From Perna viridis (taxonomy: Eukaryota), in contig CM074519.1 in assembly GCA_037379345.1 (NCBI GenBank), forward strand, positions 25,756,103-25,820,102: a stretch of 64,000 nucleotides of DNA, given 5' to 3'. This document shows positions 13,858 through 57,787 of this stretch, in pieces. Below the pieces are notes generated by a model that saw only the letters and a list, made by a program, of their open reading frames with translations, searched no databases and had not been told where the DNA came from. Positions within the stretch are counted from its first letter, which is position 1. Each line of letters begins with the position of its first letter. The position numbers were made by a program, and so were the translations under genes.

Positions 13858-14599
13858 GGACTCTAATGAGAGACAATTGACCTATATGATTTTACTTATA
13901 ACTTTTAACTTTACTTTCAGCTTACTCGCACTTGTTTTAGTTTATAATTGCTATTGATATATGAGCATATTCTCTTAAATTAGTATTTTATTATGTGTGG
14001 TGGTTTAATTTAAACCAATCAAGTAAATCATATTACCGTTCCATTAAAACCTGTTAATAAATGTATGTCACGAATTTATAAAACCAGAGAATTTATATCT
14101 ATCACAATGTTTAAACCAGTTAAAAATGTATTTCAAGTAAGTCAACTTCATTTATTTCACGATTTCATTTCAATCACTTTTTAAATATTTAAAAAAAGCT
14201 GAGTCTTGTTATCTGAACCGTTAAAAATAGTAATGACAGGTTTAAATTAAAGTGTATGCGTTTCTTCATTTGTGGTTCTGTTTTTATGCTTGTATGTTCT
14301 GTCGTCGTTTCATTCTTGTTCAATTGTTTGGCCGTGACTTGCTTTTCTGTTGTTTTTAATTTAATTTCGTTTTGTTTCTGTTCAAATTCTAAACCTTTTC
14401 AGCGTTACATATTTATTTCACTTTACATTTCGTAACATTTGTATTAAGATCAAACAAGCAAATTGTGATTACCAAATAAATCTACAGTTCCCGCCCCGAA
14501 TTTATTTCTTTTTTATTTATATCAAAGCTTACTGATATTTTACATTAAACTGATTTGTGCTTGATTTTGTATTTTATGTCCAGTATTTCTGTTTATTTG

Positions 14600-15750
14600 T
14601 AAGAGTCATCAAAGGAACCAAGATTTTAGCGGAAATCAAAAGGATGTTATCCAGGGACAAAGACCAGATATGGAAAACAGGCAAACACAACAAAGAACAT
14701 AAAGTAACTAAAATAATACATTCAAAGTAACAAAAGAAAATGAGCTGGTAGCATAGACCAAGTGCAACGGTAGGGTAAGCGTCCTTTTCTTTTAACTTTA
14801 ACAGGCATTTATTAGGGTGCTAAATTACCTGAGTATGGGTAATACATTCCACCACGGGAGTAACAAGTGTCGTGGTAAAACCGAAGACCCTCTTCTTTGA
14901 AAGATGTGAGTATATATAATTTGAAATAGGTTTGAGGATATGTTTTGTTTATTTAGCGATAGAGCGTTGACTCTTTGGATTCTTGTGCAGGTTTTGAATC
15001 CAATAAAATAGACTGTAGATCACAATCATCGTCATTAGTAAAGAAACCATAACCGGATAGTACGGATTTATGGTTTCCCCCTATCTCTTCTTTGGAGAGT
15101 GGGGTAACAGTATAGGTCTTATTACTGCTTTTATTTTCTACGTCTACTTACGATAATAAATATTATATGATGTAATGCGTCTTGCAGCCAAACACAATTT
15201 TCTTAAGGACTTTGCTTACTGGTACGACAACATACTTTGAAAACTGATGTAGCATTGACACTCATTGACCCACTTGAAACTTTCATACGTTTTGAAATGA
15301 AAGACCCCACAGCTTTTAAAAATTCAGGGAGTGAATCAATTGTTTCTTGTTCTCATTTTTATCCATTTGCTTGCATTATCCTCCACAGCATTCATAAGAA
15401 TCTGAATGTTATATTTACAATTTATGGAGCGTGATTCACGGTCCTTCGGCATTTAGAAATGATGTTACACAGAGATTCCTTTCCTGTAATGTTTACATCT
15501 CCCGTAATGCGTGACCAGAAAGACTATAGTTTTTGCAAGAACTATCAAGTGGACGTTTGTTCATTTGCCTAAAATTCTGGTATTTTACTTCTCGTTTGTC
15601 TGAGTTTTAGACGAAAGTAATAGGAGGGCATTGACTGCAATGTTATATTCTAACCATGTGAACATTGAATGTACTTCCAATCCCTTTTGCAACTTAGGTT
15701 AGGTTAAAAGACGTTCAATAATTAAAACATTTTTGTTTTAAAATAATTAT
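14600..15750 (-). mobile_element. Decayed Penelope-like retroelement (Naiad/Chlamys-type ORF fragments plus 3' terminal segment)
   Basis: Minus-strand fragments GH..ITGDVNI, KYVVVPVSKVLKKIVFGCKTHY and YWIQNLHKNP match PLE motifs GHVITGDL, VVPADKASNNIVFVCK and LYWIPKLHK. 14620-14790 matches the terminal segment seen at 38760-38940. Confidence 0.7.
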
Positions 15751-18700
15751 TGAGGATATTTATTGTTATTTTTACAATCTCTCTGCAATATATCACGTCC
15801 GAACAGTGAATTTTCTAAATAAAAATATCTATATATAATATTAATGATTAAAGTTCCACTGTCCCAAAACTATAAAATATACAGGTTGAATAGTTATAAA
15901 TTCGTGTTACATATCTTATTGTTTTTTTTTTGGTACACAGCAGATCACTCTAGATTTCCTGTCAAATATTCATGATTAACTACGCATACCAAAACAAAGT
16001 CTCACATTTGATAATCAAAGAATTTACACCATTTCAAGCAAAACAGATGATGTTGATCTCTATAAATGCTTTTTCTATTTGTTTGAACACGTCTATAATA
16101 TCTGTCTGTTTTTAAATACAGCATGTGAACCTCATTGCTTTATCTTATCAATAAAGGTATCAATTCTAACAACAGATTGCGCGGAAAAATCTGTATCCAT
16201 GAGATTATTGACACACAAATGACCTTTAATGTACGCTATTTGATTTCTGGTCAAGTAGAAAAATAACCGTTGGAAGGTCCATGGTCACAAAATTGTGACA
16301 TTCATACGATGTTAATGTTAAAAAACAAACATCGTATCAAAGCTGTTACGGAGTCTGTTAATCAAGGAGTTAATAGAAAAGTGTGTCTGGATCGTTTCTT
16401 CTAATTCTAATGTTTGTTTTTATAGATTGATATTGGTCAAAAGTTGATCGATTTATCAAGCATTTGACTATTTATGTTGTTCTTTTAGTTGACTATTTGA
16501 AGGTTTGAGCTTTCAGAAGTAGTGTTCTCTTCCCATGTTTGACATTACAAGTTTCATAATTGTGGCATTTGATACATGCATGTTACAGTTAGAATTATCT
16601 TGTTTATCGAAAATGAATTCAAGTTATTCATCATTTGTCGTATTTCCTGTTTCAAAGGTTTGACGTTATCTTTATGACTTTGAAGTTGTTTTGCTTGTTC
16701 GCAGAACTTCAACGTGTGACTGACATCTCCACAGATACTGCACGCCCTGATCTGAAAATTTTAGGTTACCAATCAAGTAGACTGTCACCGATTATCGACC
16801 AATTTATTACAATGTTGTGTTCCAGAATAGCCGCCACTCCTTTCGCAGAAAACATCATATGATAAGTATAGAGAGATGGTATGTACTACATACAATATCA
16901 CGCTCAAGCTCAGTCGTGGGTAAGCAATTTCTGCATTTCCGGAACGCTCGATTAAATTCATCAGAGGAGAGATTGTAGTATAGTCTTACGTCATTTTAAG
17001 AGACAACTTTACTGATAGACTTGAGATGTTTTTTTGATTATTGTTAATTAAGTAGATAATTTTTATGAAATATGAAGTTTTTTTTTAAAGAATTTTTTTT
17101 TCAAAATGTTTTGTCGGTTTACATAAAGTTAACGTTGACGTGTATACTATTCACTGAACACTCATAAAGTTTTGCATGTGTTTCATTTATATAAGAAAAC
17201 GGAAAGTACTAATGTGGTAGCAGTAAGTAATTTTAGTATAAACATGAATTCTTTACATAATAATCATAATTATATTTGTGCCCAAATATCAGATATCCCA
17301 TACTTGTTTTTTTTTTGTCCCTGCTTTACCATGTATTATGTTGGATATACAAAGAAATTTTATCAGAAAGATGATTATTAAGGATAAATTATGCTACACG
17401 AAGACTACATCTAAGCTATAAAAAACCTACTAAAATATCTTCTTCGAATTCAAATTTCACCTTAAATGAAATATCATTTACTACCTAATAGCTTATATAT
17501 TGTGAGCAATGTTAAAACGACAATTAAATTGATTACGGAACGTTAACAACTCAGAATAAATGTATGATTCAGCTTGTAATGTACCATTGCCACATCACAG
17601 CTAATGAAAGTATATGCCATACTTTTTTTAAAATATGTTTCTATTCTGTTTATTTTTGTCAAGCCATTACTATTTACAGTAATTGTCTTTGTGGTATATA
17701 CAAATCTCCTTTTTGAACTGTAATTGAAACTTTTAAGTAACATATATCCTGAGTGGTTTATTTCGCCAATATCAATTTCTTCAGAAAAGAGGAGAGTTTC
17801 ATGAACACCGTAAGATTTTGACGAGGTCATTCTGGCAAAAACGATTACCTTAGGCTGCTATCTACAGAAAAATAAAAATAAAATTACTGGGGTTAACTCA
17901 ATTGGAATGTAATGAGAAACGATATGCCTACCTTTCGAAAGGACATGAGGTCATTGTCTTTTCCCTATATTACAAGCGCTTAAGTTTGTTTGTGTGATGT
18001 GTTGTTTTTCTTGTCTTAGTATTTAATTCGATAGTTGGAATACTACACAAAGAATAATATAGTTTAAGATGTGATTGTACAGTATCATCTTCATATTTGG
18101 GGGAAAAACACTTCCTTAAATAGACAACAATGCACCCATAAAAACAATAACAAAACAAAAATTACTTTAACCTATGAAAATATATATGTAAACAAACTAA
18201 ACAATGGATTACCAGTAAGACGTTTAGGTTTACCCATTTGGTGATCCAAATTTTCAGACAAATTCTTTGCGGTTGATAAATGAGACTGATTTCTGCCATT
18301 CTGAATTTCGTGCATCAATACGTTTTCTAAAAACAAGATTTGTTTGCTTTGTTTGAGAACAATATTTTCAAGATTTGGATCTTTTCATCTTTTTCTTTTG
18401 AGAAATCTAATGCGCTTTCTATTGTAGATAAGAGTTCAACAATAGAAAATGCATACAAACAAAATTTAGAGACGAAAAAAGAAAAATAAAGAGGCCCAAA
18501 GACAAACACAATAACATTGTGCTTGTTACAATGAAGAGTTTATACAATGTATAGAAGGTAATATCTAATCTTAAATAACGGCTTAATTTCCATACAAAAA
18601 GCTATACGACAAGTAATCATTTTATTACTCAATTATAAGAATTCTATACTGTTCCCGGATTAATTTTGTGCGTTTATATTAGTATCTCCAAATGAAAGGA

Positions 18701-19767
18701 ATGACGAAAGGTCCGATAGTTATTTTTTTGTATTCACATCTTGTCGCACAATGTTATAACAAGAGCATTCATTTGTTAATTGGAACTAAATTTGGGACAA
18801 AATTAAGAAAAGTCCAAATAAAACTTTCAAAGACACTCTTCCATTTCATTTAAATGAAGTGACAACATTTCAAAAAATGATACTGCTTTTTTTTAACTCA
18901 AAAGTTATAAATATCTTACAACTTATTAATAAAATATTTGTATAATATGGCTTAAATAATAATATTTATGAAAAAATTGCTCATTACTTAATATGAATTT
19001 AGGCTATGGCTTTGAGGAAGGGAGTTTTAAGTACTAAAACACTTGACATGGCTATTAATGCACCTCTATTTTGTTATATTGCTGATGTCGAAAATTTGCG
19101 AGACTTCTTACAAAACATGCTGTGCGTCTGCGTTAAATGATAATACAATCACTTCATAAGTAATTTCCGAATTACGTCAATTCTGACAAAATGACGTTGA
19201 GCCATTTATGTTACAGACCATCTTAATATATCAAAGGTCGCTATCGCTCCGTTACTATTATTAATAACCACGAAATTTAATAACCCTAGAAATGATTCTG
19301 ACATAGAATTCGAAATCGTTAAACGCAAATAGTTTTTATCAATGATCTCACGAAAGTAGCGTACAGAAACGTAGGCGTGGAACTAAAAATTATGATTTCA
19401 TTTTCCCTTTTAAATGCCCTATCAGTGACAATTTTATTATAAAATATTATGTAATCTTCTGTACACATGACAAAGTAATATATCAATAGAATTGTTATAT
19501 TGTTCACTACATGTACTTAAAAGAAAGACACGACTTGTATAATTATCTGGCAATACAACAGATAACAAATGACACAATATCAGGACACTTGAATTTAACA
19601 ACAACCTAACACCTGACTGGTAAAATATGCTAAAAATTTATTTTCACCAGGTTAATCTCTCATAAAAAATTATCGTGAGCAAAATATTTAGTGACATTAA
19701 TTAATAGATCACTACTATTCATATTTTCAGATTTATTCTTTCAAAAGAGTTTTGGATATTGAAGGCA

Positions 19768-19780
19768 ATGGCCTTGATAG
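19768..19780 (+). CDS. LU-domain gene coding exon 1 (MALI-G)
   Basis: Acceptor ttttcag at 19730, ATG in gcaATGg context, donor gtaagt at 19781. Confidence 0.7.
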
Positions 19781-22700
19781 GTAAGTGTTTTCATATTATT
19801 CAATAATTTCAAGTAGATTTAAAATGAGGTGAGTTCTAAATGGATGTTGAAATGTCGAGGCTGAGATATCACACTAATATCATGCAATTTCGTTTTTTTT
19901 TTAAGATTTAAAACATTATTCATAAAGGTATATGTTCTACTATGAAAAAGATACATTATCATAAAGAAGTGAGTGAACAGACTCACCCACATAATAAAAC
20001 ATACACATTTTGTAGTACAGTAATAATGAAACAAACAAACAAAAAACAAAAAAAAACAAAAACAAAAACAAAAAAATCAACGTCCAAACCAAAGCTACCA
20101 GTATGTGTATATTACACAGAGAGTCACAAATAAGATATAATCTATGTAAATGTAAACGATTATTTCTCTCCAGGAATAATACTTTTGCTTGAGTTCTGCG
20201 GTGCAACATTGAGTAAGTATTGTAATACGATAGATTTTTCAACAAAACATACTATATTCAAAACGAAGAAATCCGACACAGCACAAAATTCTGCTCTATG
20301 AATATTCTCCATACGAACCTCCTTCTTGTCTGCAGATATCCACTTAAACAAATTTAATCCAAATGTGGCACAAAAATAGCTAAACCACTATATATAGACG
20401 TGCCGAACAATTTAAAAAATAAAAAAAGTATGTCGTTCAAACTTTAGAAAAATCGTCAGAATATAGGAAAGAAATCGTAGAAAGTACGTATACATACTTG
20501 GTATAAAAATAGGTCGCTATAATGGCTATCGATTCATAATATTCACGTTTAAATAATGGCCAGTTCAAAAAGATAATCAAAAAGTGAAGAAAAAAAATCA
20601 TCGAGGCGTCGAAAGTAATTTCTCCTATCGCAATGGGGGAACTGAGGGGAGCATCTGCTACGCTGTGCGCAGCAATTACTTATGATACATGAGAAGCGAT
20701 TTTTGTTGAGACAGTTCTTCGAACGCTACTGATTTATCAGTATTTGGCCAATCGAGAACAGAATTACGACCAGGTGACATATTTCTATAGAGGAGTGTCT
20801 GTAAAGTCAATGGATAAGGGCAGACATCTTGCTACGTGGGAAAAAAACTGTAGCCTCCGATGGTCAACCTCCCCTAATCTTTCTCTACTTATTTTTCACT
20901 TAAAATGAAATCAATTGTTTTTCTATACTTAAACGACATGACTAAAGTCTATTTTTGCTATGAAACTATTAATTTGACATCAATTTGCATAATTTAGTTC
21001 TTAATTTATTCCGTCATTTTCATTTTGTTTTGTAATTTGCAAGATGAAAAAAGTTACTTTATCAATTCAGGTTTAAAATGCATGTCCTGTAACTCTGCTT
21101 CTAACATTGTTGAGTGTATGGTTTATACGATGACTTGCAGTGACAATAATGAGGTGCGTGCATTATACATAACTACATATGAATGTATAAGAAACCAATA
21201 TCATCACTAAGTATGGAACTGTCATTAAGTAAACCGCTCTTCATAAAAATATGTTTGTATATTATTACCTTTGATCTCTGGTGAAAGTATGGTACGTTTA
21301 GCTTAAAATCGTCACTGACTTAAATGACATCATTTACCGTTTTAATTAAAAGTCCATACGCACTTAAAATTTGTGATGCTAATTAAGGTCGCTCCCTCAG
21401 CGGGTTGCAAGCCTTCTCTGTGTCCTCTGACATATATGGCAATACCGCCTGTACCAATGCTCTAGATCACTCGACTGACAAGGGTATTAAAAATATTGGT
21501 TTAATGGTTTTATCAACCGCTTGATACTTCCTTGTAAGTAAATCTAGAGCGTGAACATCAGTATATGATCTATTGGCGATTCATTGTGTAGGAAAATCTA
21601 CTGAATGGTCAATACTTTTTCAGTACACATATGCTATATTTTCATGAGATGATAGTCCTTCTTTATTCAGATCTTTTTTTTTTAGAAAACCTTACATTTA
21701 TCTCCTACTTAAATTAAACAAAATCAAACCAAAACAAGAATGAAAACTCTTTTAAAGTGCTCATTCTATACACATTCTACGTAAGATGTATCTCGTAAGC
21801 GTTTGCTTTGTCGAAATAACTATCATTCGCTCGGAGCAGTCGTTTACCTGTTCTACAATCCAAAACAGTCCACAGAGTTTACACCTGTGCACATAAACAC
21901 GTATTAGAACATTCATAAGCGTTATAAAAAGGTATGTACGGATCTTTAACAACCTTCTGCTTTGGTCATACTTTACGTCCGTCGAACTACGACTGTTTAT
22001 GTGGACTGTAACTGTTTCTGCACTTGAAACAAACCTGTTGGTTTTGGACATGCACCAATGATCTCCTATCTAATTTTTAAAATAAAAATCGCTACTAAAT
22101 ACACAACCTTCACCTGTCATAGATGACTAATTTCGTCAATACATTGACATAAATAGAACGTGTTTTTCTTGCAAGACGAAGGAACAGGTTATACATGTTA
22201 TATTTCAGAGCATTGAGATCATTGCGGTTTATAGTGTGTTTGATGCTTTTGTTTTCATCTTATTTTTAGTTCTTTTGAACTGTGTTATTCATTCTGTTTG
22301 TTTGTCCTTTTGTGGTTCCCGGCAATTTTCCTGATGATTTTCGTTTGGTTTCGATTACTTGTTCTTGAGTTTGTAATTCTGGCTACACCAACACCACACA
22401 CATCCCATCAAATTGAAGCCTCGTGAAAAATAAACGTTTCAAGGGTATAACATTGATTGTCGAATTTGAACCTTGAAAGGTTTAAAATACAGTAATTTAC
22501 GTTTCAGTTTGATTTTGTGTTCTTTGTATATTCCTTTCAAGCTACATGTTATATCAACAGGAATGTTTCTTGGATATAACTACTTTAGAGAGCTTGGAGA
22601 CAGCATACTCTGCAGGGTGCCGATCAAAAGCTGTAAGTAATAAAAAGACGTTACGAATGCATATGTTCTTCATTGTAAATGAAAATAAATCGTTGCATAA

Positions 22701-25700
22701 TATAACAAATGTATTTGTACACCTAAAATATTTCAGCAATCAAATTGAAATTACATTGAACTTGTCTTTCTATGTCAGGAACACATTCCTTTTCTGATTT
22801 TTAAGTGTTATAAAAGCGATATTTGTTTTTACTTTCCGTAAATCTGCAAGGTCTCTTTTGAAGAAAACTTCATAATCATTAAATGTAAACTAAACAAAAC
22901 TGTTATTTACTCTTTTTATTAAGTGTTTTTAACATTAAGATAATTTAAACTTTCCAGAAGTTTCGATTCAGCAGTAAATTGAGTATTCTAAAAATCTATA
23001 AACCAATGTGTGATGGCAAAATTGAAGGATCACCGAACTTATAGAAATATTGTATTCCTCCACACCTTCCTAGTTGTTGAAAACAATATATAATTATTGA
23101 CATGTGAACTATGAATGCTTGTAAGAATTATTCCAATTTGATATATGCAATCTCTGTGCAATTTAAAAGTGATGCTCATTTATAAATAGGTTTGTGATCT
23201 GATGGGATCATTGACTGGTAAAAGGAGTGTTGTGGCTTGTGCTCAGTGTTGTAAAAATCCACCTGGTACTGACGGTGCACCATGTAACGCCAGGCTTTGC
23301 AATGAAAGTAAGATTTATTTGAATTATTATTTTTTGAGTATGCCTTAGAACGCACATTATCTTAAAATGTTTTATTGTCCTATTTATCCATATCATGGAT
23401 TACAAAAATATTTCTATGTCTTAGCATTACTTTTCGTGCCAATTTTGAATTTCCGCACTATCATGTTTTTTTCATGCCATTGCATTAATCCCTTTCAACT
23501 GTACTTAACTGAAATGTTAGGTTTTATGACATACAAATCGCTCAGATGATATAAATCCCATTTTTGAACAAAAGACACGGCACGGTATCTAAAGTCTTTT
23601 CAATTGTTAGAGTTCCGATCATTTTAGTGTTCATCATACATATTCAATAAACAATATATCTAAGAAGAAAAACCTGTGCTAAAGTATTATTCAAGCCTCA
23701 TCACCACAACACTTAAAAAGAAAATTCAGTTTGAGAAGATTTTAACTATTAGTGACCTCATAAATTTACGTATTGATAGTTTTTCTTGATACTTTTTTGT
23801 CTCGAAAATATATAATATGGCTCATTGAAATGTAAATTGATAAGAGAAATACATTTAGAAGGACCTAGATAAAAAAGGAATTAGAGTGTTAAATCAGGTG
23901 TAGAAAAGATTGCAACGAAAATGAAATTTATAAAAGATTTTTGAAAATGATTTTTATAGGCATTAGAAAAGATTGCAACAATATAAAATAAAAGATTTTT
24001 TGAAAAAGTCAACAATGACAACAGACAACTACAATGAACACAAAGTGATGGCAATAGCTCACACTGACCTTCGTATCAGATGCGCTTTAAGATACGATGA
24101 GAAAACCAACCTCTTCTAACTAAATCCTGTTACACAGAGTGTTAGTTTAAAACGCCAGACTTTGATTAATATAAGTTTTAATTAATCTGAATTAAATATT
24201 ATCTATTGGAATAGAATGTAAACTTGACCTGTAACTTATCATTGCGAACTAATCATGTCATTATCTGCAAGCGTTGAAGGAAAAATCCTTAGAACGATTA
24301 TTTCTGTAAATTTCTGTAAAGTTCAAGGCCCATAATGTCAGTAAAACATCGAAGTGAAACCAAACACAAACTTGTATTGTAACTTATCACTTTTAATTTA
24401 TAATAAAAATCATGTCAATATCTGCAAATGTTCAGAAAACAATGTCAGGAAAACGGTTATATCTGTGAATTTTGATGATTACAGAGCCCGTAATTTCGGT
24501 AAAAATTATCGAAAAGTATACTTGTCCTTTAATTTATCATGGTGAACTTATTAACCAAAAAAAATTCAATATCTGCAAATGTTTAAAAAAAATTCCAGAA
24601 AACTTAAGATGGACTGAAGGACTGACGGTCAGACGGACGGGTCAAACATATTTTACCCTGCGCAACTGCATTGCGTGAGGCGTAATTATTTAAGCTCAGA
24701 TTTCTTCTCCCTTGAAATTAAGAGAACCTATATTCCATAACAGATGTAAAAGATTAGTACTGCTACTGGAGTTACGCACAATCAGGTGATAAAGGGCAAG
24801 TGATTCTTTACAATTACGACATACTGTAAGATGAAATATTGCATGAAATCAGTCAAGAACTTAAGCCAAAATTTTGTATGTCATTTGACCATAAGGTCAA
24901 AGGTCATGTTCAAAAGTCACACACCTTAATTGATACATGACACTCAACCTTGGCGTGAAATACACACATACCAAATGTCAGATATCTTAGTAAAATGGCA
25001 AAAAAGTTATGGCACAGGCAAAACTTTGGTAATATTTTGCCAAAATGTGTATCTTATATGACCATGAGGTCGACAGCTTATATTCAGGTAAAATTTCATC
25101 TATTCTGGTACGCAACACTCCACCTTGAGAGGATATACCAACATACTAAATATTAGAAGTCTAGGTCAAAAAGACAAAAAGCGTTATGGTATGGACAAAT
25201 TTTGTATGAATGGCGTCAAACTTTGGTATGTTATTTGAACATGAGGTCAAAAGTCAAGTTCAAATGTCAACCACCCTAGTATGTGGTGCCTGGCCTTCAG
25301 GTTTTATAATCCCATACCAAATATCATATGTCTAAGTGAAAAGACAAAACGATTTTAGCCCAGACAAATTTTTGTCTGGTATTTGGCCAAAATTTTGTAT
25401 GTCATTTGATCTTGGAGTTAAAGGTCAAGGTCAAAAGTAATCCTATCTTTAACATTACACTTTACCTTAATGTGATTTACTTACACACAAAAAAATCAGA
25501 TATCTTGGTAAAATGACAAACAGCAGTATGGCCAAGACAAAGTTTTTATGGTATTTTGCCAAACTTCTATGTATTTGTACTCGGGGCCAAAGGTCAAGGT
25601 CAAAGGTCACCCACCTAAAACATTACTCCCTGCCTTGGTGTGATATACTTAAATGCCCAAGGTCATGTATATAAGTAAAAAGACCTAATAATAATGGCTC

Positions 25701-52073: not shown

Positions 52074-52351
52074 TCATTCGTATTCGCCCAGATCAAATTC
52101 TTCCACTATTTCGGCTACTGTTCGCAATTCCTCGTCAATTAAAGCCTTGACAAGTAAACTCTTCGTTGCATTTTGTCCATTTATTTCTCTCCACTTCACC
52201 AACATTGAATATGACTTTTGTTCAATTTGTTGATTATTTTGATCAATTATATTAATGTTACTGTTTGAAATATTTAGATAACGACCCACATTTTTCCATT
52301 GGGGTGTTATTTCCTTTGCTATCCGTAAAAAGAGTCTGTTCCAGTTAGAAT
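52074..52351 (-). CDS. Terminal exon encoding the death domain
   Basis: Acceptor tgtctgcttcag, phase 1; LFLRIAKEITPQWKNVGRYLNIS..I..ID..N..IEQKSYSMLVKWRE..G..AT...LVKAL....L...AE matches the FADD/RIP-type death-domain consensus. Confidence 0.92.
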
Positions 52352-55300
52352 CTGAAGCAGACAATACATGTAAACATCTATTAACAAACTACATGTACCT
52401 AAAAATTGCAAGGAATTTAAACAGAGTATGTGGTTGTAAAATATATTATGCAATAAGGTTAATGGAAATAGTCTGAAACAATCATAAAAAATCTAATTGT
52501 AAACATGTTTTTATTTTCATGTGCAAGACTATACTTGGTATATATACGAACATTAATTTCCAAAAATAGTTAGGTTTTTTACACCCTAGGACAATCATTG
52601 GCGTATGTGTGAAAATGTGCTATATTTATACCATAGGCACCGACCAATGAAAGGAAATGGAGGATTAAGCTAAGGAAAATATGTTTATCCTCACATATTC
52701 TGTTGTTAGTTTTAACTTTAGGGTTTATGGTACTTATACAATGTTTGTAAATCATTGCTGCTCCTTTGAATTTCATCAACACATTTTGTTCCTGTCCATA
52801 TTTCATCGCAGTACCCACTCTTTAAATAGTTGGTATATTAAAGCTGTCTGGTTGCCCTTTAAATTTGTTTTTTTTTCGTTTTTGTTTCGTTTTGCTACTC
52901 TCACCTTGTTATATCTCATTTAGCAATGTTTTCGAGAATTAAAGTGTAATGTAACATAATTAGACTTATACCAATACGAAAATCAAGAAGTACATTTGCA
53001 TTGTTTTTACATATACTGTGTTAAAACACTCCAGCTAAGAATCATGCAAAATGTGATTCACGGCTGAAAAACCTACATATTTTTATTTTTTGATATTTTG
53101 TTTGAATTGCCATAGTAAACAGAAATTAGCATTTGGTTTTTCATATAAATTTTGTTCTTAGGAGATAAAAAATATACAGAATGCACTGTAGATTTCAAAA
53201 TTAAAGGAGGTACATGTATCTCTGTAAATGACACTCAAATACAATAGAATCCATTGGATCTTCGATCACCTATGTTGATTATCTCCTAAGAGTAGATAGA
53301 TTGGAATGAATAATTACACATTTCATAATATAGACCCATAAAACAACTTAATTACAAAAATAAAAATATGTAGCCTTTTTGGTGTGTATCACATTTTTGA
53401 GATTTTGCATGATTCTTACAAAGACAGCTACTTAAAAAAATACGAAGGTCATTCAAAGTTAATTCCTTGGTTCTCAGACCATAATTCACGAAAATCAGCG
53501 AGATAAGGAGGCACGTCTCTCTCCCTTTTTATTGCCCCAAAAAGGCAATTATCCTTTTTGAACATTCAATCACAGCAAAACCTGCAAATTATAGGTCAAA
53601 AATGGTCTATTTATAGGCCATAAAAATGGACAATAGTGTACCTTCATAAGGAACGAAAACAGGCTGAAAACTAAAAAATCACTTTAGTTGACCTTCCATG
53701 TACATGTATTTACCTTGAGTTTGCTCACTCCCATCTGAGATTCTTCCAGGGCTAGTACAAAATATAGTGTGCAAATCTGGAATATTGCCATGTCCCCATA
53801 GGGTTACTTTATATCCAGAGGAAGGTTGATTCGCTGATGTAAGCATATTGTCTGCAATCCTCAATTCCGTACCTGGAGGTGGGGTTACTACGTAATAAGG
53901 CATTTGTTTAGATTCTCTAGTATTGATATCAAGCAAGGGAAGGTTAGGTCTTCCGTGATGAGGCTGAGTCGTTGAGATTGGGACTATACTGTCCATCATA
54001 TCTTGTGGATAGTGTGTATAAAGTCGGCTGTCAGAAGGCGACGGCTTTGGACCATTTGTGTTTGGCATAGACAAAAGATCGGAATCAGACTTGTATCCAC
54101 TGTCTATAGGTTCGTTAACTACCAGTGAGTTCCGAGAAGATTTATTTGGTACAGAAGCCTAAATAAATGATTGAGTTATCAGACTTGAACAATTATGACG
54201 TGTAAATTAAAAGTCAGATAAAACATGTCCATGACTTGGTGAGAACAGCACACACACACACACACAATTTAACGTGCCAGTCTGGTTAAATACATGCATA
54301 TTCAAGCGTTTTCGTCATGAATAGCATTGAACGTTAATCTACAATCCAAGAACTTTTTCTATAAGTAATCAATTGGAAATATCTGTAATATATACATGCA
54401 TATATTACAAGTATTCCCGAGGACCTATGAAATGAATTATTTAGAAAGTATTAAATACAAAAAAATCATTGTATAATTTTCAAGAGTTGATAAAGTACAT
54501 GTACATAGTATGATATGCCCAAACACATGTATAGATTGACATTGAGGTTACTAACCATTCTATGGAATCCAGATCCAGACTTTCTTTCCAAGTCAATATT
54601 CAAAATCGTAACAGTTGATCGACTTCTTTTATCTTTCATTCGAAGTCGTTTTAACTGGAGTTGTAACGCAGCCACTGATGGTGTTCCTCCTAAAATAAAA
54701 GAAGAAAACATATAGAGTCATGTACACGGATTACTAACATTTTTATTGGTTAGAATACCTCGTTTAATCAAATTTAAAAAGCTTCTGAAATTTAAGTACC
54801 TAAAATTAATTTCTTTCAAGATCAGCGATCGTTCTAAGATGATACATGAACCTATAGCTGTGGACAGCGGTAAACGTTTGTGTCTTTTCCATAGCCACAT
54901 CAGACGTATACATCTAAACTATTATATCTTTGTTATCTTTGTTTTAAACTTTTTCAGAGAATGGCAATAAAGTTATTTGTATACGGCCAGTTTTTTTATG
55001 GGTAGGTAGGGTAAGGTTACTAAGGGGAGACAAATCTAATTTTAATATTGGCATGAGAGGAAGGGGACCCACTTATTATTTTCAATTTTTACTATATGAT
55101 CAACCAACCTCTTCAGGCAGGAGAGAGGGGGTACGCCTATGGATAGTAATTAAAATAAATAACGTGTTCTTTGCTACAACATGTACCTTTTTCTATAGTC
55201 CCGTCAGTATTTGCTTGGAATATAGCATACTGATTGAAATGTTCATCCTCTTCATATGGCTTAGGACAGTGGCACATGCAAACTATTGACCTGTCGGTGA

Positions 55301-57787
55301 CTGACGAGTTTATGTAAGATTCACTCCTTTCTAAACAATGTCCACCATGAATAAGGTACAATTCGTCATCTTTAATTTGGAGTATTTCAGATACAATTTT
55401 GATAACCTCTTCTATATTTTCTTCCGGATCATCAACTTTGATGTGAAGGAATTTTCCTCGGAATATCAATTTACTTCTGTTTGCAACCCCTTTATGAACA
55501 TATAGGCGAAACACTAATCGGTTTTGATTGTAAGAGAGTTCAAAGGAAGCTTTTCTGTCAGTAAATTCTTCAAGCAAGACGTACTCTTCTAGAATAGTTC
55601 CCTTGTACATCAAATCGAACTCTTTTGTTGAAATTTCATATTTAGTTGAAATTTCATTTTTTAATTCTTCTATTGAACAAGTTGGATACTCTTCTATTAT
55701 TGCATTATTTAACCTCTCTATATCACTACTAAGAACGATGGTAACTTTACTGATTCTTCTTACCGTGAAAACAGAGGTTGGATTAAACTGGAATGTAGAT
55801 ATAAGTTGTAAGTTTTCTACTTCTTCGATTTTATTTATGCCATTAGGTGGGAATATCTCAAACGATTGTGGTTTCCAGTGACAGTGTTTTGCAATTTCCT
55901 GTCTGAATTCATTTGTTGAACTGTCATTACGAATAAATACTGTGAAAGGATGCATGTGACCTCTATCATCACCCAGTATGCGCACATGGAGCATCCAAAA
56001 CGTGAAGACTCTTGGTGTTAAGTGTACAAGGAACGCAGGATATGAATGGAATATATTATTGTCTGAAATTAGTTTCCTTTCATTCACCAATAAAGAAATG
56101 ATTGCTTTGTAGTTCTGATCTATCCTTTTGCCATAGTCATCAGTCAATGACAAATCATATATTTCTAAGTCAGACAATTCTGTTATATTTTTCTTTGCCA
56201 ATCTATGATAATTCCAAAGAACTTGACTGAAAGTATCGGTTGACTGATATTCTACGTGATATGTGACTGAGGTTTCGTATGACTGATGATATATGAATTT
56301 AAGTATGTTTGTCTTATATTTGACGACATTGAGGTAGTAAGCGGGAGAGGTAGTAATGTTATAAAAGTTAACTTTCTCTGTTGTTTCACCATCTTCAAAT
56401 TGATGGCAGAGATGGATGAGTTCGCTTGAAAGTTGTCGCTTCATGAATGCAATGTTATCGATGTGAACAGGCTTCGGAAAAATTCTACAATAAAATGGCA
56501 CTTGATTATCTGAGATCGTTGTATTCTGACATACCGGAGACGGAGTATTGGAAAACTCTTTCGAGATGAAAAATGTGACAATGTCGGTCTTCTTATGCGT
56601 CGGCGGTAGCGAAATCACTACGGAATGGATATCTGTGAGAAAACATTCATGAGCAGTCCCAAAAACGTTCAGGAATTGTTCGTGGCTAACGACATTACAA
56701 TACGATTTCAATGACAAAATGAGGTCTCTTTGCACAAGCTCGTGACTTCTATTTCCAGTTCTACGTTTAACTATCTTCCCTGGTGTTATTGAATCGCTTA
56801 TAGTGTCGCAATCAAATACTAAGAATTCGAGAAGCTGTGTGGAATTTGATGAATATGATCCTTCTCTGTAACTAAACTCCTCTGATGTAATTGATTCTGT
56901 TAGGAATAAGAAATAGTATGGTTATAGAATTAAATACTTTTTTCGAGAATTTTTCAATGTGTACAACCGGATCATTAACTAACAAAACAAATAAATGGTC
57001 CGATCTAAAAAAAAAAAAAAAAAAAAAAAAAATGCGATGCTCTCGGATTTTTGAGAGTTGATATTGCTAGTGCTTAAGTTTCATGGGAGACGTCTTCTTT
57101 TCCATATCTTCAGTTTGTTTTGTGTAATAAGTTTCATTCTGCTTGCTACATAGTGATTATTTCCTATATAATTAAATTTGATTTAAAGATTTTAAACGCT
57201 GTACATATACAATGTACTTATCATCCATTTGAATTTTATGAGAAGGGAGGCTTTGGTCGAATTTTCTGTTATACCTTTTTTTATTTTGAGAAAGTTTAGG
57301 CCCGCCTTTTTTCGAATACAAATGTTTTTCAATAAAGTCAATTCAGATTGGCAATGTGGATACTTATGAATACAAATTGATATCATAAACAGTTCAATGA
57401 AAACTGTATTTATACATGTGTGTATATATATATAATACAAACGTCTCAGAATGTGACGACTCTATTCGCTACACTGCTCCATCGGATCAAATTGATACAG
57501 GGAAGATAACGTAAACTTATAGAAGGGTCTGAGAAATTCCCAACGATGTTAGAACTGTCACATTTGCGATGCAAATTTTTGGTCGTTCCCTCCGCGGGAC
57601 TCGAACTCGTACCGCTGTGACATCTATGGCAACACCGCCTGCGTAGTCCTAGACCACTCGACCAGATAGGCTATATAAAAATAACGCTTTCGCATAGACT
57701 TCTAATGAATTACCCAATTCCATAAAATTTCATAGTACATTGTGTTTATACAAAAATGTACACACCAATATCTGCATCAGATGCCAT
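52074..57787 (-). CDS. Tandem ubiquitin-like repeat + C-terminal death domain protein, 862 aa, 5 coding exons
   Basis: Exons 57787-57766 (MASDADI), 56896-55187, 54689-54556, 54158-53714 and 52351-52074. GT-AG introns, phases 1/1/0/1 consistent, 2589 nt. ATG in acaATGg context with an in-frame TGA 9 nt upstream. The last exon has the canonical death-domain pattern. Confidence 0.82.
53021..53435. mobile_element. TTAA-flanked MITE in the last intron of the death-domain gene
   Basis: Perfect 16-bp inverted repeat taagaatcatgcaaaa (53036-53051) / ttttgcatgattctta (53403-53418), with TTAA at both ends. Confidence 0.7.
53714..54158 (-). CDS. Death-domain gene exon 4 (S/P/T-rich linker with DSGYKS)
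   Basis: tttatttag acceptor, gtaaat donor, phase 0-1, open frame of 445 nt. Confidence 0.82.
54556..54689 (-). CDS. Death-domain gene exon 3 (GGTPSVAALQLQLKRLRMKDKRSR...HRM)
   Basis: Strong polypyrimidine acceptor, gttagt donor, phase 1-0. Confidence 0.8.
55187..56896 (-). CDS. Death-domain gene exon 2 (1710 nt; tandem ubiquitin-like domains)
   Basis: Acceptor tttcttattcctaacag; the frame stays open upstream of the listed 532-aa ORF; donor aag|gtacat. Confidence 0.9.
57420..57672 (-). mobile_element. tRNA-derived SINE in intron 1 of the death-domain gene
   Basis: Minus strand has A box tggtcgagtggt and B box gagttcgagtccc, a non-tRNA body and a (TA)n/(CA)n tail; related copy at 21386. Confidence 0.75.
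57766..57787 (-). CDS. Death-domain gene first coding segment (exon 57823-57766)
   Basis: ttcttatag acceptor, ATG GCA TCT GAT GCA GAT ATT G|gtgtgt; phase 1 matches the next exon. Confidence 0.65.

What the first reader, a model, noticed from the sequence alone, without database searches (positions are those of the whole stretch)
52074..57787. Unusual signalling-adaptor architecture: poly-ubiquitin-like array + phosphodegron + death domain
Seen: manual splicing gives an intact 862-aa ORF with an N-terminal repeat array, a basic stretch, an S/P/T-rich linker and a clear C-terminal death domain. No kinase, TIR, DED, ankyrin, LRR or caspase motif is visible. Established: death-domain adaptors (FADD, TRADD, RIPK1, MyD88, IMD) signal by acquiring ubiquitin chains that recruit NEMO/IKK and TAB/TAK1. 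Inference: I do not recognise this domain combination from any characterised family. It may be a lineage-specific innate-immune or cell-death adaptor that carries its own genetically encoded ubiquitin-like chain, acting as a scaffold, decoy or proteasome shuttle.
Basis: partly seen in the sequence, partly recalled or inferred. Interest (0 to 1): 0.8.

Follow-up and report, generated by a model that had tools for sequence, protein, structure and literature searches.

The report
Mollusc ubiquitin-like array plus death domain
This is a real, expressed, single-copy bivalve gene for a soluble protein that joins probably six ubiquitin-like folds to a FADD-like death domain; the architecture recurs in other bivalves and in snails and I found no description of it, but its function is still only inferred.

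Summary
Five GT-AG exons on the minus strand (57787..52074) give an 862-aa frame with no internal stop. Single transcript contigs from three separate studies span all five exons at exactly the predicted joints.

The last exon is a Pfam Death domain (E 1e-13). As a family profile it is closest to the FADD death domain.

The 1710-nt exon folds (AlphaFold2, pLDDT 81.5) into six beta-grasp units:
- Units C-F superpose on linear tetra-ubiquitin, OASL, ISG15 and parkin.
- Units D-F are also ubiquitin-like by sequence.
- Units A and B rest on predicted topology only.

No unit ends in Gly-Gly, so the array is not a precursor of free modifiers. The canonical ubiquitin L8/I44/V70 patch is not conserved. 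The DSGxxS "degron" is private to this species, whereas GYKSD[ST]DL is conserved.

Orthologues occur in Mytilus and distant relatives in gastropods, with the same array plus death domain layout. All named ones are "uncharacterized" or "hypothetical". The gene is single-copy here.

Best reading: a soluble death-domain adaptor whose fixed ubiquitin-like array is a docking platform. That function is inference. The joined protein was never sent to a search or fold tool; exons were searched by reference.

The parts
57766..57787 (-). Exon 1: start codon and first 7 1/3 codons (MASDADI-); the 5' UTR continues upstream to at least 57900
   Evidence: Frame and GT donor. Transcript contigs join 57766 to 56896. 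The N-terminus matches orthologues P0001-P0004.
55187..56896 (-). Exon 2 (1710 nt): the whole ubiquitin-like array, model residues 8-578
   Evidence: Open frame. Homologues at 61-42% identity over 100% of it. AlphaFold2 pLDDT 81.5, pTM 0.65.
56604..56837 (-). Unit A (exon-2 residues 20-97): predicted beta-grasp topology, with no sequence signal
   Evidence: Secondary structure E21-28, E40-45, H51-61, E65-70, E89-96 at pLDDT about 77-89. hhalign to the other units and to ubiquitin gives probability <1%. Not confirmed by a structural match.
56316..56585 (-). Unit B (residues 104-193): predicted beta-grasp with weak sequence support
   Evidence: Secondary structure. hhalign B-E gives 72 columns end to end but only 13.9% probability. 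Weak in-register ubiquitin-HMM hits map to this unit in P0033 and P0036, and P0036 and P0014 have a whole-protein Pfam Rad60-SLD hit whose best stretch (173-233 in P0036) reaches it.
56013..56312 (-). Unit C (residues 195-294): ubiquitin-like fold with a long insert
   Evidence: Tetra-ubiquitin 5b83_A aligns to 196-545 with 291 residues. hhalign C-ubiquitin gives 24.5% over 51 columns. With unit D it is the best conserved part of the array (56.8% identity to orthologues).
55752..56003 (-). Unit D (residues 298-381): ubiquitin-like fold
   Evidence: The OASL tandem ubiquitin-like domain aligns to 298-458, Z 12.5. hhalign D-E gives 96.6%. ISG15 covers profile positions 299-425.
55524..55748 (-). 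Unit E (residues 383-457): the most ubiquitin-like unit
   Evidence: Pfam PF00240. Ubiquitin, FAT10 and ISG15 give Z 12-13 at rmsd 1.4-1.7 A over 74-76 residues. hhalign E-ubiquitin gives 97.5%.
55263..55520 (-). Unit F (residues 459-544): ubiquitin-like fold with an insert after strand 1
   Evidence: Parkin ubiquitin-like domain Z 12.0, rmsd 1.6 A on 460-547. RAD23 ubiquitin-like domain E 3.7e-9. hhalign F-ubiquitin gives 91.8%.
54556..54689 (-). Exon 3: conserved amphipathic basic segment (VAALQLQLKRLRMKDKRSR; basic core at 54619-54651)
   Evidence: Joints in transcripts. Aligned with orthologues.
53714..54158 (-). Exon 4: Ser/Pro/Thr-rich linker carrying short conserved motifs
   Evidence: Joints. 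Composition. No Pfam family at E<=1. 36% identity to orthologues, with conserved islands.
54075..54104 (-). DSGYKSDSDL: the GYKSD[ST]DL core (54075-54098) is conserved; the DSGxxS reading (54087-54104) is private to this species
   Evidence: Motif position. Orthologue block.
53751..53816 (-). Conserved linker motif GY..T.WG..GN[IL]P[DN]...I.G[ST] of unknown role
   Evidence: Orthologue block. No Pfam hit, RHIM included.
52074..52351 (-). Exon 5: death domain (52098-52322) and stop codon (52074-52076); the 3' UTR runs to about 52020
   Evidence: Pfam Death E 1.2e-13. Family profile against PDB: FADD death domain E 1.7e-14. It is the most conserved part of the protein (63%). Contig ends.

Best explanation
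Shown. This is a bona fide, transcribed, single-copy gene. It encodes an 862-aa soluble protein with no signal peptide and no membrane segment. The protein has three parts:
1. An N-terminal array of probably six integral ubiquitin-like (beta-grasp) domains, encoded by one exon. The domains cannot be cleaved out and cannot be conjugated.
2. A linker of about 190 aa, rich in Ser, Pro and Thr, with a basic helix and several conserved short motifs.
3. A C-terminal death domain of the FADD/RIPK1/TNFR1-like kind.

The gene belongs to a fast-evolving, uncharacterised family found so far in bivalves and gastropods. The array-linker-death-domain order is kept across that family.

Inferred mechanism. 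The death domain takes the protein into death-domain oligomers, most plausibly platforms of the death-receptor/FADD/RIPK type. The fixed ubiquitin-like array then acts as a multivalent docking platform, in the manner of the USP7 C-terminal ubiquitin-like array or the OASL and ISG15 tandem domains. The linker motifs would be regulatory sites. The array probably binds its own specific partners rather than generic ubiquitin readers.
For: Gene and splicing:
- All junctions are GT-AG and the frame is intact.
- Single transcript contigs from three studies span all exons.
- Relatives' transcripts P0001 (L001) and P0036 (L003) carry the array and the death domain in one uninterrupted frame.

Death domain:
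- Pfam E 1.2e-13.
- The profile is closest to FADD (1.7e-14), then THOC1, RIPK1, ankyrin, PIDD, TRADD, TNFR1, Fas and CRADD. No MyD88, IRAK or Pelle chain appears below 1e-3.

Array:
- AlphaFold2 pLDDT 81.5 with six beta-beta-alpha-beta-beta units.
- Foldseek: tetra-ubiquitin 4e-19; USP7 ubiquitin-like array 1e-13 over 560-630 columns.
- VIA-align: Z 12-13 on units C-F.
- Sequence profiles.

Other properties:
- No C-terminal Gly-Gly in any unit.
- No hydrophobic segment.

Family:
- Mytilus californianus and M. edulis orthologues carry PF00240+PF00531.
- Nucella lapillus P0022 has a ubiquitin-like domain plus a Death domain.
- A Death ORF lies 3.5-8 kb downstream on the same strand in three genomic contigs of distant relatives.
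- The gene is single-copy in its own genome.
- The death domain and units C and D are the best conserved parts.
Against: - No functional datum exists. Expression level or induction could not be read from contigs.
- Units A and B are supported only by predicted topology and weak in-register alignments. The count may therefore be four to six.
- The Gigantopelta relative P0021 (676 aa) shows no death domain in Pfam, so the fusion may not be universal, or that gene model may be truncated.
- Similarity of a death domain to FADD does not predict its partner.
- The ubiquitin-patch analysis rests on an approximate MAFFT alignment.
Confidence: 0.6

Rival explanations
1. Built-in polyubiquitin mimic. 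When the death domains oligomerise, the clustered array is read by ubiquitin-chain receptors (NEMO UBAN, TAB2/3 NZF, ABIN, optineurin). Kinases are then switched on without an E3 ligase building chains.
For: The best Foldseek matches are linear tetra-, tri- and di-ubiquitin taken from complexes with HOIL-1L, ABIN, optineurin and NEMO. The head-to-tail units have short linkers, as in Met1-linked chains. Unit E is 20% identical to ubiquitin at rmsd about 1.5 A.
Against: The L8/I44/H68/V70 patch and the C-terminal LRLRGG tail that these receptors read are not conserved in any unit. Units are only 14-20% identical to ubiquitin. Units C and F carry inserts. pTM 0.65 hints at a packed array rather than beads on a string. 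The Foldseek matches reflect the fold, not the binding surface.
Confidence: 0.12
2. Proteasome shuttle or negative regulator. The death domain captures a death-domain partner and the ubiquitin-like units dock on proteasome receptors, as in RAD23, ubiquilin, FAT10 and midnolin. This would damp death or immune signalling.
For: Unit F matches the RAD23 ubiquitin-like domain (E 3.7e-9) and unit E matches ubiquilin and FAT10. Midnolin-proteasome ubiquitin-like domains appear among the structural matches. A long disordered linker could serve as an initiation region.
Against: The same loss of the I44 patch applies, and Rpn10 and Rpn13 use that patch. Six units are far more than known shuttles carry. 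The protein has no UBA or other cargo-binding ubiquitin receptor domain.
Confidence: 0.12
3. Integrated decoy. The ubiquitin-like array is bait for pathogen enzymes that attack ubiquitin or ISG15-like modifiers (viral or bacterial deubiquitinases, ubiquitin-modifying effectors). Engagement frees the death domain to trigger cell death.
For: The family evolves fast (16-19% identity between bivalve and gastropod arrays) while the death domain is conserved. It resembles the antiviral tandem ubiquitin-like proteins ISG15 and OASL. Ubiquitin-system domains fused to the TRADD-N apoptosis/immunity adaptor domain are reported in marine invertebrates (PMC8195603).
Against: There is no Gly-Gly or LRLRGG tail for a deubiquitinase to grip. 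The gene is single-copy and not expanded, unlike arms-race families. There is no direct evidence of any kind.
Confidence: 0.06
4. Annotation artefact. The 1710-nt exon and the death-domain exon belong to two genes, or the array is a decayed polyubiquitin pseudogene.
For: None found.
Against: Single transcript contigs join all five exons in three independent studies, and a fourth reaches 28 nt into exon 5. Orthologous transcripts are collinear. The frame is intact and conserved. The genuine polyubiquitin genes lie elsewhere in the genome.
Confidence: 0.01

Closest known systems
FADD and the other death-domain adaptors of the death-receptor pathway (RIPK1, TRADD, CRADD)
   Same: It has a C-terminal death domain of about 85 aa. 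The family profile scores best on the FADD death domain (E 1.7e-14), then RIPK1, TRADD, TNFR1, Fas and CRADD. It is a soluble adaptor-like protein with no enzymatic domain.
   Different: It has no DED, kinase, TRADD-N, CARD or RHIM. The partner module is a ubiquitin-like array, which none of these proteins have. Orthology to any of them is not shown.
USP7/HAUSP C-terminal ubiquitin-like array (HUBL, five units)
   Same: Both are long runs of divergent, non-conjugatable ubiquitin-like folds inside one polypeptide. Foldseek aligns 560-630 columns at E about 1e-13. That array works as a partner-docking and regulatory platform, which is the function proposed here.
   Different: There is no USP catalytic or TRAF/MATH domain here. 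Sequence identity is only 9-11% and no sequence-level relation was detected. This array has six units rather than five and sits at the N-terminus.
ISG15, FAT10 and the OASL C-terminal tandem ubiquitin-like domains
   Same: They have head-to-tail ubiquitin-like units. ISG15 aligns over two units by sequence profile. OASL aligns over units D and E at Z 12.5. All three act in innate immunity.
   Different: ISG15 and FAT10 end in Gly-Gly and are conjugated; no unit here does. They have two units, not six. None has a death domain.
Linear (Met1-linked) polyubiquitin and the polyubiquitin precursor
   Same: It is the best structural match: tetra-ubiquitin at E 4e-19, with 291 residues aligned on units C-F.
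   Different: Units are 14-20% identical to ubiquitin and differ from one another. They carry inserts and have no Gly-Gly. The I44 patch is not kept. The genome's real polyubiquitin genes are on other contigs.

Membership tests
Death domain (Pfam PF00531, death-fold superfamily) | Sequence match to the death-domain profile above the curated cut-off over the whole domain | tested here: met
   51.4 bits against a cut-off of 22.6, profile positions 7-84 of 86. FADD death domain E 1.7e-14 with the family profile.
Death domain (Pfam PF00531, death-fold superfamily) | Six-helix bundle fold and homotypic oligomerisation | not tested
Binding needs an experiment.
Ubiquitin-like (beta-grasp) domains, integral type | Beta-beta-alpha-beta-beta fold superposable on ubiquitin | tested here: met
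   Units C-F: Z 12-13, rmsd 1.4-1.7 A for single units, and tetra-ubiquitin aligned on 196-545. Units A and B: predicted topology only.
Ubiquitin-like modifiers (ubiquitin, NEDD8, ISG15, FAT10) and polyubiquitin precursors | Each unit, or the last unit, ends in an exposed Gly-Gly for processing and conjugation | tested here: not met
   The only GG in the exon lies inside unit F at residues 517-518. No unit ends in GG.
Ubiquitin-like modifiers (ubiquitin, NEDD8, ISG15, FAT10) and polyubiquitin precursors | Conserved L8/I44/H68/V70 recognition patch | tested here: not met
   Columns aligned to these residues are mixed polar and hydrophobic in every unit across 14 family members. The alignment is approximate.
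USP7-type ubiquitin-like array | The array is attached to a USP (UCH) catalytic domain | tested here: not met
   No UCH or MATH family in any exon at E<=1.
beta-TrCP phosphodegron (DSGxxS) | The motif is present and conserved in orthologues | tested here: not met
   DSGYKS is present at residues 641-646. Orthologues read D-GYKS or GYKS, and the first Ser is an insertion private to this species.
FADD / TRADD / RIPK1 / MyD88 / IMD adaptors | Second signature module (DED, TRADD-N, kinase plus RHIM, TIR, or the IMD-type motif) | tested here: not met
   No such Pfam family in any exon at E<=1. The IMD caspase-site/IAP-binding motif was not assessed.

The most novel reading that the evidence does not exclude
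The family is a self-contained signalling switch. Death-domain oligomerisation clusters a hard-wired ubiquitin-like array, and that array replaces E3-built ubiquitin chains as the recruiting signal. Alternatively, the array serves as bait for pathogen enzymes that target ubiquitin. Either way, molluscs would have an E3-independent route from a death-domain platform to kinase activation or cell death.
Probability: 0.12. Interest if true: 0.8.

Novelty: new variant of a known kind. Interest (0 to 1): 0.5.

Why it matters
Death-domain adaptors are normally regulated by ubiquitin chains added after translation. Here a run of ubiquitin-like folds is fused in cis to a FADD-like death domain, and the fusion has been kept through bivalve and gastropod evolution. 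That points to a selected function rather than one of the many one-off domain shuffles of invertebrate immune genes.

The gene is single-copy, so it is a tractable target. It could show how mollusc death-receptor-type signalling is wired. It could also show what long arrays of divergent ubiquitin-like domains recognise. It also gives a name and a model to a set of "uncharacterized" proteins in Mytilus, Gigantopelta and Nucella.

Tried and rejected
Approaches that led nowhere or gave limited results:
- The first AlphaFold2 run, with seven close sequences, gave pLDDT 51 and was unusable. Adding seven distant relatives raised it to 81.5.
- The word-index searches with the family alignment and with P0036 added almost nothing. 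The taxonomic range therefore rests on the one exhaustive HMMER search.
- ESM Atlas look-ups scored under 0.9 and gave leads only. The look-up for units A and B was uninformative.
- A narrow ubiquitin HMM found only weak, though in-register, hits on units B, C and F.
- hhalign could not link unit A to anything.
- Model coordinates are not exposed, so per-unit superposition and the inter-unit geometry could not be computed.

Readings rejected:
- Two separate genes.
- A polyubiquitin pseudogene or modifier precursor.
- A conserved beta-TrCP degron.
- A RHIM or any other Pfam family in the linker.
- A membrane or secreted protein.
- A tRNA or Rfam RNA in the introns.
- A lineage-expanded paralogue family in this genome.

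It was used only inside scripts, for frame, motif and composition counts and for a local alignment with four orthologues.
Full report
**Gene model.** The window is AT-rich eukaryotic DNA (GC 0.29-0.37) and has no N runs. There are five exons of 22, 1710, 134, 445 and 278 nt. Every intron starts with GT and ends with AG. The phases are compatible, and the frame is 862 codons plus a stop with no internal stop. The joined protein was used only inside scripts, for frame, motif and composition counts and for a local alignment with four orthologues.

**Transcript evidence.** Of 24 listed runs, 14 hold about 45-58% of the stretch's sampled words, which is about the exonic share. I laid four of them, from four studies.
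- In X5, X6 and X11 one contig (2692, 2645 and 2787 nt) covers exon 1 through exon 5. The joints are 52351|53714, 54157|54555, 54688|55186 and 56896|57766. The skipped ends are CT..AC on the plus strand, which is GT..AG on the gene's strand.
- In X1 the contig spans exons 1-4 and 28 nt of exon 5.
- Introns have zero or low depth except over two dispersed repeats.

That test fails, so the gene is one unit. These are contigs, so nothing can be said about expression level or induction.

**Death domain.**
- The last exon matches Pfam Death (PF00531) at E 1.2e-13, 51.4 bits against a cut-off of 22.6, over nearly the whole profile.
- On its own it hits the death domains of THOC1, FADD, TNFR1, RIPK1 and ankyrin in PDB.
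- I built a four-member family profile from the window, two relatives' transcripts and one genomic ORF (A5). It scores FADD's death domain best (E 1.7e-14, full length). THOC1, RIPK1, ankyrins, PIDD, TRADD, TNFR1, Fas and CRADD follow.
- No MyD88, IRAK, Pelle or Tube chain appears below 1e-3.
- It is the best conserved region among orthologues (63% identity).

**The array.**
- Pfam sees one ubiquitin-family hit above cut-off (exon-2 residues 401-443) and a sub-threshold PB1 hit on the same unit.
- A profile of close relatives hits ISG15 across two units and RAD23 on a third.
- With the wider family profile, ubiquitin, ISG15 (two stretches), RAD23 (3.7e-9), ubiquilin and FAT10 are all significant.
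- AlphaFold2 with only close relatives failed (pLDDT 51). With 14 sequences including distant relatives it gave pLDDT 81.5 and pTM 0.65.
- That model has six consecutive beta-beta-alpha-beta-beta units: A 20-97, B 104-193, C 195-294, D 298-381, E 383-457 and F 459-544.

Structural matches to that model:
- Foldseek against PDB ranks linear tetra-ubiquitin first (E 4e-19, about 355 columns).
- The USP7 C-terminal ubiquitin-like array follows (E about 1e-13, 560-630 columns). Di-ubiquitin, tri-ubiquitin, ISG15, OASL and FAT10 come after it.
- VIA-align gives ubiquitin, FAT10 and ISG15 on unit E at Z 12-13 and rmsd 1.4-1.7 A.
- OASL's tandem domain aligns on units D and E (Z 12.5). Tetra-ubiquitin aligns on 196-545 with 291 aligned residues. 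Parkin and Fubi align on unit F.

Profile-profile comparison of the units:

| Pair | hhalign probability |
|---|---|
| E - ubiquitin | 97.5% |
| F - ubiquitin | 91.8% |
| D - E | 96.6% |
| E - F | 93.3% |
| C - ubiquitin | 24.5% |
| B - E | 13.9% (72 columns, in register) |
| A - anything | none |

So four units (C-F) are established. B is likely. A rests on predicted topology alone. The companion note s1-766592 counted about five units over 55269-56582, which corresponds to B-F.

**What the array is not.**
- No unit ends in Gly-Gly. The only GG is internal to unit F. The units therefore cannot be released as conjugatable modifiers.
- With ubiquitin added to each unit's family alignment, the columns equivalent to L8, I44, H68 and V70 are not conserved in any unit (approximate alignment). 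That patch is what NEMO, TAB2, ABIN and the proteasome receptors read. The "encoded ubiquitin chain" idea is thus weakened, although not excluded.

**Linker.**
- Residues 578-771 hold 59 Ser, Pro or Thr residues among 194 and are poorer in hydrophobic residues than the array (27% against 38%).
- The basic stretch exists (KRLRMKDKRSR, 591-601). It sits in a conserved amphipathic segment.
- The DSGxxS motif is there (DSGYKS, 641-646). Orthologues read D-GYKSDTDL or GYKSDTDL, and the first Ser is a private one-residue insertion. It is therefore not a conserved beta-TrCP degron.
- The conserved islands are GYKSD[ST]DL, S[PS]S[DE]S[RQ][LI], an aromatic/aliphatic-x-V-x-[TS]PP motif, and GY..T.WG..GN[IL]P[DN]...I.G[ST]. 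Their roles are unknown, and Pfam finds nothing in these exons at E<=1.
- There is no signal peptide and no membrane segment. The highest 19-residue hydropathy mean is 1.08, and the N-terminus is acidic.

**Family and range.**
- The word-index search found six relatives with the same Pfam pair. They include Mytilus californianus LOC127711251 (905 aa) and an M. edulis protein (938 aa), both "uncharacterized". A 61%-identical 854-aa protein sits on a 2788-nt transcript contig with one uninterrupted frame.
- The exhaustive HMMER search of 1.84 billion representatives found only 25 hits at E<=1e-3. About half are polyubiquitins.
- The rest are distant multi-ubiquitin-like proteins that align collinearly with the array at 15-19% identity. 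They include Gigantopelta aegis LOC121380403 and Nucella lapillus ACOMHN_004184, both gastropods.
- Nucella P0022 and the 1099-aa transcript product P0036 carry a C-terminal Death domain.
- For three relatives known only as the large ORF on genomic contigs, a Death-domain ORF lies 3.5-8 kb downstream on the same strand. Two of these are paralogues in one sample.
- The architecture is therefore conserved well beyond this species. The Gigantopelta model lacks a detectable death domain.
- In the window's own 723-Mb genome the gene is single-copy. A family profile finds only this gene and two polyubiquitin loci.

**Comparison with the known.** I found no chain in PDB, no source name and no paper describing a ubiquitin-like array fused to a death domain. 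PMC8195603 notes ubiquitin-system domains among the partners of TRADD-N, an apoptosis and immunity adaptor domain, in marine invertebrates. Fusions of ubiquitin-type modules to such adaptors are therefore a known theme, and I rate this a new variant of a known kind, not a new category. Absence from this library is not proof of absence from the literature.

**Mechanism.** Shown: the gene, its splicing, the domain content, the lack of conjugation signals and the conservation. Inferred: the death domain recruits the protein to death-domain oligomers, most plausibly of the FADD/RIPK/TNFR type given the profile ranking. The array would be a multivalent docking platform, comparable to the USP7 ubiquitin-like array, with the linker motifs as regulatory sites. 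The rivals are a ubiquitin-chain mimic, a proteasome shuttle and a pathogen decoy. They are scored lower for the reasons above, and none is excluded.

Noticed in passing
window 57319-57712 (intron 1): A dispersed short repeat. RNA-run contigs pile up here to depths in the thousands. A 201-nt piece has at least 881 first-look candidates in the genome, and the 40 scored copies, on many contigs, are about 90-93% identical. It has a tRNA-like look by eye, but ARAGORN and Rfam find nothing.
   Followed up: partly
window 52985-53575 (intron 4): A second highly repeated element, with summed contig depth of 10,000-25,000 in all four runs. Nearly all contigs lack one base at 53086 relative to the window. 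It is probably a transposable element or MITE. It was not classified.
   Followed up: no
window 55944-55964 and 55875-55889 (unit D, exon-2 residues 311-317 and 336-340): RGHMHPF and KHCHW are invariant in all mytilid-type orthologues but absent from the gastropod-type relatives. A cluster of His and Cys on one ubiquitin-like unit could be a lineage-specific metal or partner site.
   Followed up: no
G000:C10:36154206-36155939 and G000:C3:32288891-32290624: The genome's two polyubiquitin loci (open frames of 615 and 625 aa). They were found as the only other matches to the family profile.
   Followed up: no
window 54239-54273 and 56972-57043: A (GT)n microsatellite in intron 3, and in intron 1 a low-complexity stretch that the read tool skipped, which includes a T run of about 28 bases on the gene strand. 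Both were skipped by the read-laying tool as simple repeats.
   Followed up: no
window 55223-56859 (exon 2): About 14 single-base differences between the window and the transcript contigs of the four studies. Several are shared by two or three runs, so they are ordinary population polymorphism. Their coding effect was not worked out.
   Followed up: no
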